45,074 bases of DNA from Octopus bimaculoides. Taxonomy: Eukaryota. The first letter of the stretch is position 1. Each line of letters starts with the position of its first letter. The stretch is taken from positions 19,752,207 to 19,797,280 of the forward strand of contig NC_068998.1 of NCBI RefSeq assembly GCF_001194135.2, given 5' to 3'. The position numbers were made by a program, and so were the translations under genes. Shown piece by piece: positions 9,481-37,741 of this stretch. The notes below the pieces were generated by a model. It was given only the letters and a program-made list of their open reading frames with translations. It was not told the origin of the DNA and made no database searches.

Positions 9481-9563
9481 TTACTGGTTATTTCTGGTTA
9501 TGAAAATTCTGGTCTAAACATGTATTGACCAGAGTTGGATAAATTGTGAGGAATAACCAGTGA
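9481..9563 (+). promoter_or_regulatory. SECIS element, copy 1
   Basis: ATGA 9500-9503, helix II AATTCTGGTC/GACCAGAGTT, apical loop TAAACATGTATT (AAA 9516-9518), GA 9538-9539, helix I 9481-9495 with 9549-9563. Confidence 0.9.
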
Positions 9564-9593
9564 AAAACTCGACTGAAAATGAATTATTTGGTG

Positions 9594-9604
9594 ATTAAAA
9601 TAAA
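9594..9604 (+). promoter_or_regulatory. Candidate poly(A) signal, copy 1 (overlapping ATTAAA/AATAAA)
   Basis: ~30 nt after the SECIS. ATTAAA sits at equivalent positions in copy 2 (30753-30758) and copy 3 (37628-37623, minus). Confidence 0.55.
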
Positions 9605-9790
9605 AAATGAATATATCATGATTCAGTGTTGTTTCTTAATCATTTTTTCTTCTCTTTCAGTCTTCTTATCAGTTGTTTAATATTAGTGTATGTAGAAAAT
9701 GCGTACAAATTTACATATTTCTCTATGTATACAGGATTGCACTTGACTTCAATAAATCATGTCTGATATGGGGCTCCCAATGTACTGGCA

Positions 9791-33529: not shown

Positions 33530-35103
33530 TATGGAAACTAGGGATAGATGAGTGGTTGGTGAGAGCTGTACAAGCTATGTACAGGGATGCTACCAGTAAG
33601 GTGAGGGTTGGCAATGAGTATAGTGAAGAATTCAGGGCACAAATAGGGGTTCACCAAGGATTGGTGCTCATCCCTCTCTTGTTAATCATAGTCCTCCTGG
33701 CAATAGCAGAGGAATTCAAAACAGGCTGCTCCTCTATGCTGATGACCTTGCTCTTATAGCTGAATCACTACCTGAACTAAAGAAGAAGTTCCAGGTACGG
33801 GAGCAAGGTCTCGAATCAAAGGGAGTAACCTAGCAAAAACCAAAGTCTTAGTAAGTAGGAAGGCAGACAAATCACAAATCCCTTCAGGTAGATGATTCTG
33901 CTCAATCTGTCGAAAAAGTGTAGATAGAAACTCCATAAGATGCACCCAGTGTAAGCTTGGGACATGAAAGGTGCAGCAATATCAGGGGAAGTCAACAGGG
34001 AAACTAACTTTTGTATGCGGAAGATGCACAGGTACAATAATTGCTGAAAATAAGACTCCATCAACTGCCAGGGAGGCAAGCTAGAGATAGTAGATAGCTT
34101 CCGTTATCTAAGTGACCAAGTTAGTAGTGGAGGTGGATGCTCTGAGAGTATAGCTGTGAGAATAAAATTAGGATGGGCGAAGTTCAGAGAGCTCCCACCC
34201 TTGCTGGCAACAAAGGGCCTCTCTCTCAGAGTGAAAGGCAGATTGTTTGATGCCTGTGTGCGAACAGCTATGCTGCATGGCAGTGTAACATATGCTGTGG
34301 CAGCTGAGGATATGCATAAGCTTGAAAGAAATGAAGCTAGTATGCTCTGCTGCGTGTGTAATGTCAGTGTGCATGTTCAACAGAGTGTAAGCATCTTGAG
34401 AGAAAAGCTAGGCATAAGAGGCATCAGATGTGGTGTGCAAGAGAGATAACTGTGCTGGTATGGTCATGTGATGCATATGGATGAGGACAGCTGTGTAAAG
34501 AAGTGCTGGTCTCTAACTATGAAGGGAACCTGTGGTAGAGGTAGACCCAGGAAGACATTGGATGAGGTGGTGAAGCATGATCTTTGAACTTTGAGCCTCA
34601 CAGAGGCAAAGACTAATGACTAAGACCTTTGGCGATGTCCTGTGTTTGATAGGACCTGTCAAGCCAAGTGCACCTGTGCTGGTGGCATGTAAAGAACACC
34701 ATTTGAGCATTGGGTCTCACGGAGGCAAAGTGGCTGAGTTCCTTTTGAGTGTTGGGCCTCATGGAGGCAATAACCGAGACCTTTGGCATTATGTCATGCT
34801 TGAGAAGAAGACCCCATGAAGCTGAGCAAAATCACAGTCATGGCAGATACTGGTGTCATGAAAATTGGCACCGATGCTGGTGGCACATAAAAGCACCCCA
34901 GTGTCACGCAAATGGTACCTATGCCGGTGGCATGTAAACACACCCGTTACACTCTCAGAGTGGTTGGCATTTGGAAGGGCATCCAGCCGTAGAAAATCAT
35001 ACCAAATCAGACTGGAGAGTGTGCAGCATGGCAGCATGGTCAAATCATCCAACCTATGCCAACATGGACAATGGATATTAAATGATGAGGTTGATGATGA
35101 TGA
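33530..35103 (+). mobile_element. 5'-truncated RTE LINE with Cys-rich insert and GAT tail
   Basis: VHQGLVLIPLL, YADDL, CSICRKSVDRNSIRCTQCKL, GWAKFRELPPLL, CVRTAMLHGS; same family as 3830-5325. Confidence 0.85.
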
Positions 35104-37659
35104 CACACTGAATAATAAAATTCACAATTTCTGGAGAAAAAAGACAAGATAGTCATGCTTTGTATCCCTTTACTCAATCAGGGCTAAACTGGTATTAAAC
35201 AACAATGAGAATTAAATCATGAATGTTTGCTACAAGCTTATCAATAACACTGTGACACTTACTATATTTTCAACCATACAAGTCAAATTTTTCTAGCCAA
35301 AACTTACAACCAAAAAAAGCAAGTTGACTTATGACTTTCAAGGACAAAAATTCCGATGTGAAATGCAGCAGGATTTGGAAAGATGATAATGTTTGACTGT
35401 TTACACTGTATATTATATCAACTTATCTGTTAGAACATATGGTAACTGTTACTAGTCTTCTTCATGTGCCATACTTACAGGTGTTGGTGATCACAGACCT
35501 CTTTTCTCTGTTCAAGGCTTTGTCTTCTAATATCATGTTCAATGAACTTGAACTGATGCATCATGTTAAAAAGATTTTTGTTCATCTATGATCTTCAGTA
35601 TTTGTTAACACTATCTATATAGGATAGCTATGAGAAGCCATAACTCTGTAACATTGCTAAGTTTTTGCACTTGTTTGTTTATATAAGGATGAGTTCTACA
35701 TATGCTCTTAGGACTTTTTTCCTCAGTCTTATTGATAGATATTTATTTGACAATATATGAGATCTCACAAAAAACAACCTTGGCCAGCCCAATCCTTTAC
35801 ACAATTTTTTTGATGTTTTTCCTGTCTGATGTAATGATGATTTCCAAATCTTCAACTCTTTGGTACAGCCTCCTTCTCCAAATTGTTTTAAAATTATCTA
35901 AAAACCTTTCATCAGAATTTCATATCAATTTGTGTCCAAACAAGAGCTTAATAATGACAAAATTGTTTTACTAAATTCTGTATTATTTTCAAATTAATAT
36001 TGAAACAAAAGCAGCATATTTAACAGAGATATGGTAACAGAAAGGTTAAAGCTGTCAACTTGTTTCAAGATTGCTCTACTAAGTTTCATGCTTTAAATTG
36101 GTGATACTTTGACATTTATCATTGTCTTTGTTTTGTTTTCATTAACAGTAGTAACAAATATTTCTAAATATTTCACTGACCTTGCTGTGAGGACTGCATC
36201 ATCTGCATAACAGATATTGCTCTTTTCTTTTCCTATCTGTGTACTTTTTTTAATGGCTTATTGAAGAAGTAGTAGTAAAGCTCATGGCCATACAGATTTG
36301 TGAGATTAGTACACTTGATGTTTGTAATAGGTAAAAAAAAGGACTGCAAATAGTAATGCATGTGTGCATACATGTGGAAGTGACATGCAATGAGCTACCT
36401 CAGATGAGAAGAGATCATTGTAACAGTGGTGGAAGAAGTACAATGATAAGACAGTGTGTCTGAGAGCCAGAGATAATAGTATGTTGAATAGCTTTCTTTT
36501 GGATGAAGTTAGGATATTTGAGCTTATAGCAACTGCTGCAGTGTCTCAGATGTTGGAACAGTATTATATTGTAGGTCATATTTGAATTTTGTAGAGAATA
36601 AATAGGTGCTCAGAGATGGAACTATATTCTATCACTGAAAAGGAAAGCTAGTCTTTAAGACAGAGATTTTGCTGTACTGGGACAACCAAGAAAGATCATC
36701 AGAAGCAGTGAGAGTTAGCCTGATAGCATTTGATTTATTGAATAAGTTACTCCTGATTGTATGTTGTCCAAGTCTAGAAAGGGTGGAGGATAAGATTAAT
36801 CAACATGAGCATCTTTGTACTGTTGAATGAAACAAGATTGCCATAAATTGACTGAAAAATATCTTTGAGATCACTGCTCATGGAAGCAACACAGGCTTGA
36901 TCTCACATATATAGGCTGGATATGGATTACCTGTGTAGAAGGTTAGAAGGGAGTGAAGAGTAAGAAGATTAGCAAAGGAGTGAGTATTATTAAAGGTTAT
37001 AGTAAGCTGTTTATGTAAAACTGGAAGAGTGAAGATGCACCAGAATCGATAGTGTGTGGGTCAGAGAGAGCCCTATTTGTGAATGGTGTATACAGTGATA
37101 ACTGAAGAGGATTTGCTTTCTAAAGTTAACTAGTGAATACAATGAGCATATTTATATGTTATTAAACCTCTTCAGTGAAAAATATTCCAATTAGTTAAAT
37201 CATATTGATTTGGAAAGTATTAACATTACTGTAACATTACTGTACCTAGGAATACACACAAATGTCTCTCATTTCAAACTTTTCAAGTCAGACAAGCAGC
37301 TAAGAAATTTAGAAAAAAAAAAAAAAAATTAGAGTTGTGACAACCAATACTAAAAGGAAAGTACTGGAACCAAAATACTAAAAATGGCTGTAACTGGGAA
37401 TAAAAACTGGGTCATGGACTCTGTGACTCTTTGCAAAGCAAACTTTCCAATTCCATGGCTCTGGTATTCTACAGATAGAAATATCTAAATTTACAAATGT
37501 ATCTTACTCATGTCAACAATGATAAATGAATGTATTTTATGATAATGCAAAGTTTCAAACAAGAAATTGTTTAAAGAAATAAAAGAAATAATGACCAGAC
37601 ACAATATAATGTTTTTTTAAAATTTAATTTTCAAATAAATAATTTTCTGTTGAGTTTTT

Positions 37660-37741
37660 CACTGGTTATTCCACACAATTTATCCAATTCTGGTCGATAC
37701 ATGTTTAAACCAGAATTTTCATAACCAAAAATAACCAGTAA
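37660..37741 (-). promoter_or_regulatory. SECIS element, copy 3
   Basis: Minus strand: ATGA (37722-37719), helix II AATTCTGGTT/GACCAGAATT, loop TAAACATGTATC, GA (37684-37683), helix I present. Confidence 0.9.

What the first reader, a model, noticed from the sequence alone, without database searches (positions are those of the whole stretch)
9481..37741. Three SECIS elements with covarying helix II
Seen: copy 1 AATTCTGGTC/GACCAGAGTT, copy 2 AATGCTGGTT/GACTAGTGTT and copy 3 AATTCTGGTT/GACCAGAATT. All substitutions keep Watson-Crick or G-U pairing; the ATGA/GA quartet, apical AAA and a ~15-bp helix I are preserved. Established: this is the canonical eukaryotic SECIS layout. It also implies copy 1 is or recently was a selenoprotein gene, although its Sec exon is not in view.
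Basis: partly seen in the sequence, partly recalled or inferred. Interest (0 to 1): 0.78.

Follow-up and report, generated by a model that had tools for sequence, protein, structure and literature searches.

The report
Three octopus selenoprotein SECIS hairpins
The three hairpins are real selenocysteine-insertion (SECIS) signals in the 3' untranslated regions of three neighbouring, duplicated SELENOW2/MIEN1-like selenoprotein genes in an octopus genome: a sound but ordinary find whose main use is to correct public annotations that truncate or fuse these genes.

Summary
All three quoted elements exist as written. Their ATGA cores are at 9500 (+), 30659 (+) and 37722, but the third is on the minus strand. 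Each has ATGA, then a 10-bp helix II, an apical AAA, a 3' GA and a roughly 15-bp helix I.

A simple SECIS descriptor hits only these three sites in the window, against 0.22 expected by chance. Rfam SECIS_1 is the best family locally (29.1, 19.6 and 29.6 bits) but stays below its 35-bit threshold.

The window is octopus DNA, collinear with Octopus vulgaris chromosome OX597831.1. Each SECIS lies downstream of an Rdx-family gene whose closest solved structure is MIEN1. Genes 2 and 3 show an in-frame TGA in a CxxU motif inside the window. Gene 1's Sec exon lies about 8-11 kb left of the window; a transcript from a close relative reads ...HIEYCNSUGYE...CIIL.

Between this species and O. vulgaris the SECIS cores are 97-98% identical, against 84-93% for their flanks.

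"Covarying" overstates the case: there is one double change (U-A to G·U), and the other changes are wobble-compatible. No assembly gap touches a SECIS, but gap 27091-27779 hides gene 2's last coding exon.

Verdict: new members of a known kind, of modest interest.

The parts
9481..9563 (+). SECIS 1 (gene 1). ATGA at 9500-9503; helix II 9505-9514 with 9527-9536; AAA at 9516-9518; GA at 9538-9539; helix I about 15 bp.
   Evidence: SECIS_1 29.1 bits; z -6.7. It is 97.9% identical to O. vulgaris against 84% for the flanks.
30637..30724 (+). SECIS 2 (gene 2). ATGA at 30659-30662; helix II 30664-30673 with 30685-30694; AAA at 30675-30677; GA at 30696-30697.
   Evidence: SECIS_1 19.6 bits; z -2.8. It is 96.8% identical to O. 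vulgaris against 84% for the flanks.
37659..37741 (-). SECIS 3 (gene 3), on the minus strand. ATGA at 37722-37719; helix II 37717-37708 with 37695-37686.
   Evidence: SECIS_1 29.6 bits; z -5.0. It is 96.8% identical to O. vulgaris against 92.6% for the flanks.
5535..5611 (+). Gene 1 exon 3: (A)AFEITINDKLVFSRLQSFSFPSSEQ.
   Evidence: tblastn. It is 100% identical to mRNA contig L002 nt 223-300. Splice sites were read.
8465..8548 (+). Gene 1 exon 4 coding part: IVNLLHDVQAGKTIPVIEESSSGCIIQ plus the TAA stop (8546-8548). It ends in a CaaX box.
   Evidence: L002 continues through it. MIEN1 aligns to the very C-terminus.
8549..9620 (+). Gene 1 3' UTR carrying SECIS 1. Poly(A) hexamers ATTAAA at 9594 and AATAAA at 9599 follow the hairpin.
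   Evidence: L002 nt 297-1183 matches window 8461-9350 without a break at 94.9%. Hexamers were listed.
21983..22074 (+). Gene 2 exon 1 coding part: MSENRSSSSTIDDTEKSSVSQKHLRVEIEY plus TG, the first two bases of the Cys codon. The 5' splice site is GTGAGT.
   Evidence: The same junction is seen in mRNA contig L006.
24121..24221 (+). Gene 2 exon 2, the Sec exon: (C)QS-U-GGWKRMESLRKAIYREFPEARVMDTVSKKR(G). The TGA is at 24128-24130.
   Evidence: The amino-acid sequence is identical in O. vulgaris.
24683..24759 (+). Gene 2 exon 3: (G)AFEVSINGNLFFSHLESCCYPDSDK.
27091..27779 (.). Assembly gap at the place where gene 2's last coding exon should be. In O. vulgaris that exon reads VVALLHDVQDGKKPPVVERSNSRCTIL*.
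   Evidence: Flanks map to L004 55488-55643 and 56055 onward. The O. vulgaris exon is at about L004 55717-55800.
44549..44649 (-). Gene 3 exon 2, the Sec exon: (C)DA-U-GGWNKMNSLRKDIQNEFPEAKVVDIISKTF(G). The TGA is at 44642-44640. Exon 1 lies beyond the right end of the window.
   Evidence: O. vulgaris exon 1 (MSTKEESAQKTEVENKNPDELYVVIEY-TG|gtaagt) lies 7.6 kb upstream of exon 2.
42150..42226 (-). Gene 3 exon 3: (G)AFEVSVNGQFIHSRLESGSNAVHEQ.
39835..39900 (-). Gene 3 exon 4 coding part: ILCILRDAKAGKPIPVISKDE plus a TAG stop. The stop comes six codons before a relic of the CaaX box (GTC TGC TGA ACT CTA TAA).
   Evidence: The stop is at the same place in O. vulgaris and O. sinensis.
30753..30771 (+). 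Two ATTAAA hexamers about 30-45 nt after SECIS 2. Similarity among the paralogues ends about 30 nt further on.
37623..37628 (-). ATTAAA hexamer about 30 nt after SECIS 3.

Best explanation
The three hairpins are form-1 eukaryotic SECIS elements. Each lies at the far 3' end of the 3' UTR of one of three tandemly duplicated SELENOW2/MIEN1-like (Rdx-family) selenoprotein genes in an octopus genome. Genes 1 and 2 are on the + strand. Gene 3 is on the - strand, tail-to-tail with gene 2.

Shown here:
- The sequence layout of the elements.
- The gene models, with an in-frame TGA in a CxxU motif.
- Spliced transcripts with that in-frame UGA from related cephalopods.
- Stronger conservation of the hairpins than of their flanks.

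Inferred from established knowledge of Sec decoding:
- In the mRNA, the kink-turn formed by AUGA and GA binds SECISBP2.
- SECISBP2 recruits eEFSec carrying Sec-tRNA[Ser]Sec to the ribosome, so that the UGA about 1-2.7 kb upstream is read as selenocysteine instead of stop.
- The products are small thioredoxin-fold redox proteins.
- Genes 1 and 2 end in a CaaX box (CIIQ; CTIL in O. vulgaris) and so are probably prenylated and membrane-anchored like MIEN1.
- Gene 3 has lost that box.
For: Layout:
- ATGA, AAA and GGAT are invariant in 8 sequences, with a 10-bp helix II and a 15-bp helix I.
- A descriptor scan hits only these 3 sites, against 0.22 expected.
- SECIS_1 is the best Rfam family for copies 1 and 3, with local E about 1e-3.
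- Fold z-scores run from -2.8 to -6.7.

Gene context:
- All three genes hit Pfam Rdx above its cutoff.
- The best solved structure is MIEN1 (2LJK) at 1e-12, aligned up to the CaaX box.
- The TGA sits where MIEN1 has the second Cys of CxxC.
- Transcript contigs L002 (gene 1 type), L006 (gene 2 type) and L003/L007 (a more distant cephalopod) all read through an in-frame TGA in C-x-x-TGA.

Conservation:
- SECIS cores differ from O. vulgaris at 8 of 284 positions, against 506 of 3678 in the flanks (Fisher p = 1.2e-9).
- Among the paralogues the 95-nt SECIS is 79-91% identical while the coding exons are 38-70% identical.

Position in the mRNA:
- Poly(A) hexamers lie 25-45 nt downstream of each hairpin, and paralogue similarity stops there.
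- In the polyadenylated contig L007, a SECIS-like ATGA/AAAA/GGA hairpin lies about 75 nt before the poly(A) tail.
Against: - Rfam SECIS_1 scores (29.1, 19.6, 29.6 bits) are below the curated 35 bits. The hits vanish in whole-window scans.
- Covariation alone is not decisive: one double change, and 23 of 500 shuffles reach the observed score.
- No transcript covering a SECIS of the octopus genes was obtained. L002 stops 130 nt short of SECIS 1. An ATTAAA at 9455 lies just upstream of SECIS 1.
- Gene 3 looks unconstrained. Its pN/pS is about 0.95, with coding divergence equal to flank divergence. No transcript was found for it in two protein searches. Its SECIS is not significantly better conserved than its flanks (p = 0.14). 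In O. sinensis the first pair of its helix II is A·C.
- Gene 2's last coding exon cannot be read in this window because it falls in a gap.
Confidence: 0.85

Rival explanations
1. Gene 3 (and therefore SECIS 3) is a decaying or already non-functional duplicate. On this reading the hairpin is a recent relic rather than a working SECIS, while genes 1 and 2 are functional.
For: - pN/pS is about 0.95 (14 non-synonymous and 4 synonymous differences in 79 codons).
- Coding divergence of 7.6% equals the flank divergence of 7.4%.
- The CaaX box was lost through a TAG stop shared by three species.
- No gene-3-type transcript-derived protein turned up in the two database searches that could have found one. 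Gene-1-type and gene-2-type proteins were found.
- Conservation of SECIS 3 is not significantly above its flanks (p = 0.14).
- There is an A·C mismatch in the O. sinensis copy.
Against: - The reading frame, all splice sites seen, the TGA and the SECIS core motifs are intact in the window species, in O. vulgaris and, for exons 3-4 and the SECIS, in O. sinensis.
- Genes 1 and 2 also show pN/pS near or above 1 on very few sites, so the statistic is weak here.
Confidence: 0.25
2. The UGA is an ordinary stop, and the real products start at the first AUG after it, as the public annotations have it (72-78 aa). The hairpins would then be 3' UTR structures with another role.
For: NCBI and UniProt models for O. 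sinensis and O. vulgaris start at MESLRK... and MNTLRK.... Rfam SECIS_1 is below threshold.
Against: - The frame upstream of the TGA is open and conserved from an ATG through ...(I/V)EYC-x-x-TGA in all three genes and in four transcript contigs.
- That stretch aligns to beta-strand 1 and the CxxC of MIEN1 and completes the Pfam Rdx profile from position 1.
- The truncated models lack the redox motif.
- One O. vulgaris model is an evident fusion of gene 1 with exon 1 of gene 2 that ends at the TGA.
Confidence: 0.04
3. The hairpins are copies of a hairpin-forming repeat (MITE-like) or are microRNA precursors that resemble a SECIS by chance.
For: They are long, stable hairpins of about 90 nt present three times. 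Weak miRNA-family hits overlap them. A true MITE-like palindrome near gene 2 in O. vulgaris scores 42 bits with the custom model.
Against: - The custom model finds copies only downstream of the three genes in 162 kb from three species.
- The miRNA hits are 15-19 bits against thresholds of 70-139.
- The hairpins are orientation-specific with respect to their gene and carry invariant ATGA/AAA/GA at SECIS spacing.
- They are orthologously placed and conserved.
Confidence: 0.03

Closest known systems
Eukaryotic SECIS element (Rfam RF00031 SECIS_1; form 1, AAA in the apical loop)
   Same: It has the AUGA ... AA(A) ... GA core with 12 nt between AUGA and AAA. It has helix I, an internal loop, helix II and an apical loop. 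It lies in the 3' UTR of mRNAs with an in-frame UGA.
   Different: Scores are 5-15 bits below Rfam's gathering threshold. The base before the 3' GA is G (GGAU) where the Rfam consensus has U. Helix I is unusually long and nearly perfect at 15 bp. The nucleotide sequence is far better conserved among old paralogues than the coding sequence is.
SELENOW2 / MIEN1 (formerly Rdx12) branch of the SelW-like Rdx family. Invertebrate members are placed in the SELENOW2 branch by PMC13134290. Zebrafish SelW2a/b are tandem duplicates (PMC3316567).
   Same: It has the Rdx fold signature, a CxxU at the position of MIEN1's CxxC, and a C-terminal CaaX as in human MIEN1 (CVIL). It is small, about 100 aa. It arose by lineage-specific tandem duplication.
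   Different: - There are three copies in one octopus locus, one of them inverted.
- Gene 3 has lost the CaaX box.
- Gene 2 has an N-terminal Ser-rich extension with a TEKSSVSQ unit, repeated in O. vulgaris.
- No tree was built here, so assignment to the SELENOW2 branch rests on the paper's statement about invertebrate genes and on the best PDB match.
Selenoprotein W (SELENOW1; PDB 2NPB)
   Same: Same family and same CxxU position.
   Different: It is a much weaker match (E 6e-3 against 1e-12 for MIEN1). SelW has no CaaX box.

Membership tests
Eukaryotic SECIS element | 5' AUGA and 3' GA that can form the non-Watson-Crick quartet (kink-turn) | tested here: met
   ATGA and GGAT are invariant in 3 window copies and 5 orthologues. 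The descriptor scan requires both.
Eukaryotic SECIS element | Unpaired AA(A) in the apical loop or bulge, 10-13 nt 3' of the AUGA | tested here: met
   AAA lies 12 nt after ATGA in all copies.
Eukaryotic SECIS element | Helix I, internal loop, helix II and apical loop, kept across relatives | tested here: met
   96.6% of pair cells are standard pairs, against 30-52% when the partner columns are slid. Support from covariation itself is weak (1 double change; 23 of 500 shuffles).
Eukaryotic SECIS element | Location in the 3' UTR of an mRNA with an in-frame UGA | tested here: met
   Gene models are. mRNA contig L002 is continuous from the stop codon to 130 nt before SECIS 1. The last 130 nt, and the UTRs of genes 2 and 3, are inferred from downstream poly(A) hexamers.
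Eukaryotic SECIS element | Score at or above the Rfam RF00031 gathering threshold (35 bits) | tested here: not met
   29.1, 19.6 and 29.6 bits in local scans. There was no hit in whole-window scans.
Eukaryotic SECIS element | Binds SECISBP2 and supports UGA recoding | not testable with these tools
   Needs a binding or reporter assay.
SELENOW2/MIEN1 (Rdx family, PF10262) | Rdx domain above Pfam's curated cutoff | tested here: met
   38.9, 35.6 and 27.5 bits for the window-encoded parts, and 62.5 bits for the full gene-1-type protein. The cutoff is 22.6.
SELENOW2/MIEN1 (Rdx family, PF10262) | CxxU (or CxxC) redox motif after beta-strand 1 | tested here: met
   Gene 2 has C|QS-TGA across the exon 1/2 junction. 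Gene 3 has (C)DA-TGA, with the Cys supplied by exon 1 seen only in O. vulgaris. Gene 1 has CNS-TGA, seen only in the L002 mRNA and in O. vulgaris.
SELENOW2/MIEN1 (Rdx family, PF10262) | C-terminal CaaX prenylation box (a feature of MIEN1) | tested here: inconclusive
   Gene 1 has CIIQ*. Gene 2 is unreadable in the window because of the gap, but is CTIL* in O. vulgaris. Gene 3 lacks it because of a premature TAG.
SELENOW2/MIEN1 (Rdx family, PF10262) | Phylogenetic placement inside the SELENOW2/MIEN1 clade rather than SELENOW1, T or H | not tested
   There is only a best-hit argument: MIEN1 at 1e-12 against SelW at 6e-3, plus NCBI's name 'migration and invasion enhancer 1-like' for the O. sinensis gene-2 orthologue.

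The most novel reading that the evidence does not exclude
The roughly 260-nt SECIS-bearing block is kept almost identical among paralogues whose proteins have drifted to about 40-50% identity. Genes 1 and 3 are the most alike here (86-91%) even though their proteins are the least alike. This could mean that the block is homogenised by gene conversion between inverted copies. Alternatively it could carry a sequence-specific function beyond the canonical SECIS requirements, for example a lineage-specific SECIS-binding or 3'-end-processing factor. Gene 3 would then be a CaaX-less, soluble, fast-evolving selenoprotein rather than a pseudogene.
Probability: 0.15. Interest if true: 0.45.

Novelty: new member of a known kind. 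Interest (0 to 1): 0.3.

Why it matters
The finding fixes three gene models. Public octopus annotations either start these proteins after the Sec codon, which drops the redox motif, or fuse gene 1 with the first exon of gene 2 and stop at the UGA.

It adds a cephalopod-specific tandem expansion to the SELENOW2/MIEN1 group. It also shows that prenylatable (CaaX) Sec-containing members exist in molluscs.

It is not a new mechanism. SECIS-directed Sec insertion, invertebrate SELENOW2 genes and tandem SelW2 duplicates are all described (PMC13134290, PMC3316567).

Tried and rejected
- I first took the window for fish DNA, on GC content of 36% and repeat content. The first protein search showed it is octopus.
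- A strict CxxU scan of six-frame translations missed the Sec exons, because the Cys codon is split by intron 1.
- I considered that the conserved block starting at 9359 is a separate last exon ('tag|TCAAGGGTGA'). I rejected this because mRNA contig L002 runs unspliced from the stop codon to 9350.
- I searched for gene 1's Sec exon inside the window with tblastn and nhmmer and found none. Synteny shows it lies outside the window, not in gap 3691-3790.
- I looked for exon 1 of gene 3 in the last 430 bases of the window and found none. It lies 7.6 kb upstream of exon 2 in O. vulgaris.
- Rfam gave no SECIS_1 hit on five cephalopod transcript contigs. Only my own model found the candidate in L007.
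- A fourth hit of my model (L004 46588-46709) is a perfect MITE-like palindrome without ATGA/GA. I rejected it as a SECIS.
- My recollection that two repeats are mariner-like and RTE-like was not confirmed by Pfam.

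
Full report

AATTCTGGTC is at 9505-9514 (+) and AATGCTGGTT at 30664-30673 (+). AATTCTGGTT is at 37717-37708 on the minus strand, with its partner GACCAGAATT read from 37695-37686. Copy 3 is therefore inverted relative to copies 1 and 2, which the finding does not say.

An alignment of the three regions shows a conserved block of about 260 nt. Copy 1 against copy 3 is 86.5% identical, copy 1 against copy 2 is 78.7%, and copy 2 against copy 3 is 75.5%.

Within that block, each copy has the following, in order:
- ATGA, then one base;
- a 10-nt arm, then one base;
- AAA, then the remaining 8 nt (7 nt in copy 2) of the loop;
- the complementary arm;
- G, then GA;
- an outer helix of about 15 bp.

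Single-sequence folds give z-scores of -6.7, -2.8 and -5.0.

I wrote a simple SECIS descriptor. It requires ATGA, AA 10-13 nt downstream, a helix II of at least 9 bp with at most one mismatch, a 3' GA, and a helix I with at least 9 of 10 pairs. It hits exactly these three places on the two strands of the window. One hundred first-order Markov simulations gave a mean of 0.22 hits and never three.

**2. Covariance-model scores**

Rfam finds nothing at gathering thresholds in the whole window. A permissive whole-window scan lists only microsatellite-derived miRNA-like noise.

Scans of 451-nt pieces, where the filters are laxer, behave differently. SECIS_1 (RF00031) is the best-scoring family for copies 1 and 3 (29.1 and 29.6 bits, E about 1e-3). 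It is second by bits for copy 2 (19.6 bits, E 0.36). All three are below the 35-bit gathering score.

I do not treat it as refuting, because the independent context evidence below is strong. It is my own knowledge, not tested here, that the short SECIS_1 model misses many genuine invertebrate SECIS elements.

**3. Assembly gaps, tested first as the scan's program asked**

The window is collinear with gap-free Octopus vulgaris chromosome OX597831.1. Window 340-38048 matches L004 21038-63708, and window 44762-35193 matches L001 9863-17717, at 84-93% identity.

| Gap | What surrounds it |
|---|---|
| 20702-20823 | Flanks land in order on the O. vulgaris sequence; the gap is intergenic |
| 27091-27779 | The interval that in O. 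vulgaris holds gene 2's last coding exon; that exon is unreadable here |
| 28829-29606 | Flanks land in order; in gene 2's 3' UTR next to a repeat insertion |
| 29920-29929 | Inside a microsatellite in the same UTR |

No gap is in or adjacent to a SECIS.

**4. What the hairpins belong to**

A tblastn search with Rdx-family proteins found three copies of a 'GAFE(V/I)..N...S.L' exon. They lie at 5535-5611 (+), 24683-24759 (+) and 42226-42150 (-), each 4-6 kb upstream of a hairpin on the same strand.

Upstream of two of these exons is an exon that starts one base before x-x-TGA-GGW...EFPEA:
- gene 2: 24121-24221, with the TGA at 24128-24130;
- gene 3: 44649-44549, with the TGA at 44642-44640.

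The single leading base (C or T) completes a TG|N Cys codon split by intron 1. Gene 2's exon 1 (21983-22074) reads MSENRSSSSTIDDTEKSSVSQKHLRVEIEY-TG|gtgagt. The motif in gene 2 is therefore C-Q-S-U.

The last coding exon of gene 1 (8465-8548) ends ...SSGCIIQ*, which is a CaaX box. That of gene 3 (39900-39835) stops at a TAG six codons before a relic of such a box.

All three conceptual products hit Pfam Rdx (PF10262) above its cutoff. The best solved structure is human MIEN1/C17orf37 (2LJK, E 1e-12), aligned from beta-strand 1 through the C-terminal CVIL. Selenoprotein W (2NPB) is far weaker at 6e-3.

**5. Evidence from other sequences**

Protein searches returned several relevant hits:
- An O. 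vulgaris 'SelT/SelW/SelH family protein', 86% identical to gene 3 but starting at the Met after the Sec codon.
- An O. sinensis 'migration and invasion enhancer 1-like' protein, which is the gene 2 orthologue, likewise truncated.
- An O. vulgaris model that fuses an out-of-frame start of gene 1, gene 1's exons 3-4 and gene 2's exon 1, and ends at gene 2's TGA.
- Several short RNA-derived contigs, described next.

L002 is 100% identical to gene 1's exon 3 and 94.9% identical to its 3' UTR. It reads ATG-...-HIEYCNS-TGA-GYEDRVDEL...SSGCIIL* and continues unspliced to the equivalent of window 9350.

L006 is a gene-2-type mRNA with ...RVEIEYCQS-TGA-GGWKRMESL...KCTIV*.

L003 and L007, from a more distant cephalopod, read ...HIEYCNS-TGA-GYQD...SSCVIL*. 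L007 is polyadenylated. It carries a SECIS-like ATGA/AAAA/GGA hairpin about 75 nt before the tail. My own model scores it at 26 bits (E 0.004), and its fold z-score is only -1.5, so it is a candidate only.

**6. Gene 1's missing Sec exon**

In O. vulgaris, gene 1's exons 1 and 2 are at L004 9902-10019 and 12926-13027, and exon 3 is at 29911-29988. Intron 2 is therefore about 17 kb.

The window starts at about L004 20,700. Exons 1-2 must therefore lie roughly 8-11 kb to the left of the window, not in gap 3691-3790. Searches inside the window found nothing.

**7. Selection on the hairpins**

| Element | Core identity to O. vulgaris | Flank identity | Fisher p |
|---|---|---|---|
| SECIS 1 | 93/95 (97.9%) | 84.0% | 3e-5 |
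| SECIS 2 | 91/94 (96.8%) | 83.7% | 2e-4 |
| SECIS 3 | 92/95 (96.8%) | 92.6% | 0.14 |
| Pooled | 8/284 differ | 506/3678 differ | 1.2e-9 |

Among the three paralogues of O. vulgaris, the 95-nt SECIS is 79-91% identical whereas the coding exons are 38-70% identical. The hairpin is thus the best-conserved part of these genes.

**8. How good is the 'covariation'?**

I counted pairs on eight sequences: three from the window, three from O. vulgaris and two from O. sinensis. Seven are distinct, and 96.6% of pair cells are standard pairs.

Only one pair shows a change on both sides: U-A to G·U in helix II of the gene-2 lineage. Four helix II pairs and three helix I pairs vary on one side through wobble pairs. 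Two helix I pairs are broken in one lineage each. In O. sinensis, gene 3 has an A·C at the first pair of helix II.

23 of 500 column shuffles reach the observed covariation score. The substitutions are compatible with the structure, and there are more pair-preserving changes than I would expect from neutral change. That is my own rough estimate, not a formal test. Even so, this is not strong covariation, and there are no Watson-Crick-to-Watson-Crick swaps in helix II.

**9. Position in the mRNA**

In gene 1's 3' UTR the only poly(A) hexamers between the stop codon and position 9750 are three:
- ATTAAA at 9455, just upstream of the hairpin;
- ATTAAA at 9594;
- AATAAA at 9599, 30-35 nt after the hairpin.

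Gene 2 has ATTAAA at 30753 and 30766. Gene 3 has ATTAAA at 37628 (-). Similarity among the paralogues ends 20-40 nt after these hexamers. This fits mRNA 3' ends there and matches the arrangement in L007.

I could not obtain a transcript that covers an octopus SECIS. Use of the 9455 hexamer would cut off SECIS 1 and cannot be excluded from sequence alone.

**10. Is every copy functional?**

Gene 3 differs from its O. vulgaris orthologue at 14 non-synonymous and 4 synonymous positions in 79 codons (pN 0.075, pS 0.079). This equals the divergence of its non-coding flanks. It has lost the CaaX box in all three species. No transcript-derived protein of its type was returned by the searches that did return gene-1 and gene-2 types.

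Against that, its frame, its splice sites, the TGA and the SECIS motifs are intact in every species examined. I rate 'gene 3 is decaying or non-functional' at about 0.25.

Genes 1 and 2 also show few synonymous changes and pN/pS near or above 1 on very few sites. Their exons are nevertheless much better conserved than their flanks (about 4-6% against 16% divergence).

**11. Comparison with what is known**

SELENOW2 and MIEN1 (formerly Rdx12) are sister groups within the SelW-like family. Invertebrate genes fall in the SELENOW2 branch, and MIEN1 arose from SELENOW2 in jawed vertebrates (PMC13134290). Zebrafish SelW2a and SelW2b are tandem duplicates (PMC3316567).

I found no paper in the searchable library that describes these octopus genes. 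The locus is therefore a new, lineage-specific tandem expansion of a known selenoprotein family with ordinary SECIS elements: new members of a known kind.

**12. Mechanism, and which steps are inferred**

Shown here are the sequence layout, the gene models with in-frame UGA, spliced transcripts of two of the three gene types in relatives, and conservation of the hairpins.

Inferred from established Sec-decoding biology:
- The AUGA/GA kink-turn binds SECISBP2.
- SECISBP2 recruits eEFSec with Sec-tRNA to recode the UGA about 1-2.7 kb upstream.

Inferred from homology with MIEN1:
- The proteins have a thioredoxin-like fold with a CxxU redox centre.
- Genes 1 and 2 are prenylated at the CaaX box.

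**13. Verdict**

Interest is modest at 0.3. The practical value is correcting mis-annotated selenoprotein genes in octopus genomes.

Noticed in passing
window 9359-9616, 30565-30802 and 37861-37583 (-); O. vulgaris L004 34444-34720, 58130-58362 and 63293-63530: The SECIS block is far more alike among the paralogues (79-91%) than their coding exons are (38-70%). Genes 1 and 3 are closest in this block although their proteins are the least alike. Similarity between genes 1 and 3 rises abruptly from none to 86% at 9359. The cause could be gene conversion between the inverted copies or an extra sequence constraint. This is unresolved.
   Followed up: partly
L004 10001-53708 (O. vulgaris model P0008), P0001 and P0004: Public gene models are wrong in typical selenoprotein ways. 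Two start at the first Met after the Sec codon. One fuses an out-of-frame piece of gene 1's exons 1-2, gene 1's exons 3-4 and gene 2's exon 1 across 43.7 kb, and stops at gene 2's TGA.
   Followed up: yes
window 21983-22074; L004 about 47160-47372: Gene 2's exon 1 encodes a Ser-rich N-terminal extension. The unit TEKSSVSQ occurs once in the window species. It occurs about five times in tandem, with variants, in O. vulgaris, which adds 40 residues.
   Followed up: partly
window 8540-8548: The last residue of gene 1's CaaX box varies among close relatives. It is CIIQ in the window, CIIL in transcript L002 and CTIV in O. vulgaris. From general knowledge this could change the type of prenylation.
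   Followed up: no
window 5537-5611 and 8465-8548 against L004: Gene 1's readable coding part has 7 non-synonymous and 0 synonymous differences from O. vulgaris over 53 codons, including the stop codon, although the flanks differ by about 16%. The sample is small and the pattern is unexplained.
   Followed up: no
window 9455-9460: An ATTAAA hexamer lies about 20 nt upstream of the base of SECIS 1. It occurs only in gene 1. If used, it would give an mRNA without the SECIS.
   Followed up: no
L004 46456-46793 and L005 3106-3227; absent between window 21644 and 21633: A perfect palindrome of about 150 nt (MITE-like) sits inside a 337-nt insertion just upstream of gene 2 in O. vulgaris and O. sinensis, but not in the window species. 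It scored 42 bits with my SECIS model purely as a hairpin.
   Followed up: partly
window 6721-7126, 11179-11586, 12587-13004, 13869-14269 (-), 23565-23986 and others: A dispersed repeat of about 400 bp has at least 8 copies in the window (70-90% identical) and many more in O. vulgaris. It often lies next to TA/CA microsatellites, which produce the spurious mir-297-like Rfam hits.
   Followed up: no
window 3891-4961, 22325-22949, 24925-25316 and 33534-34686; also 9950-10300: Repeated ORF-bearing fragments looked to me like the tail of a non-LTR retrotransposon reverse transcriptase. A fragment just after gene 1 looked like the N-terminus of a mariner transposase. Pfam did not confirm either.
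   Followed up: partly
L003 643-726, L007 640-715, L008 632-707 and L009 546-621: There is a conserved, nearly perfect hairpin of about 75 nt in the proximal 3' UTR of the gene-1-type mRNA of a more distant cephalopod. It has no SECIS core in the right orientation. Its function is unknown.
   Followed up: no
L004 1-5727: The upstream neighbour of the gene cluster in O. vulgaris is a SNAPC5-domain gene on the opposite strand.
   Followed up: no
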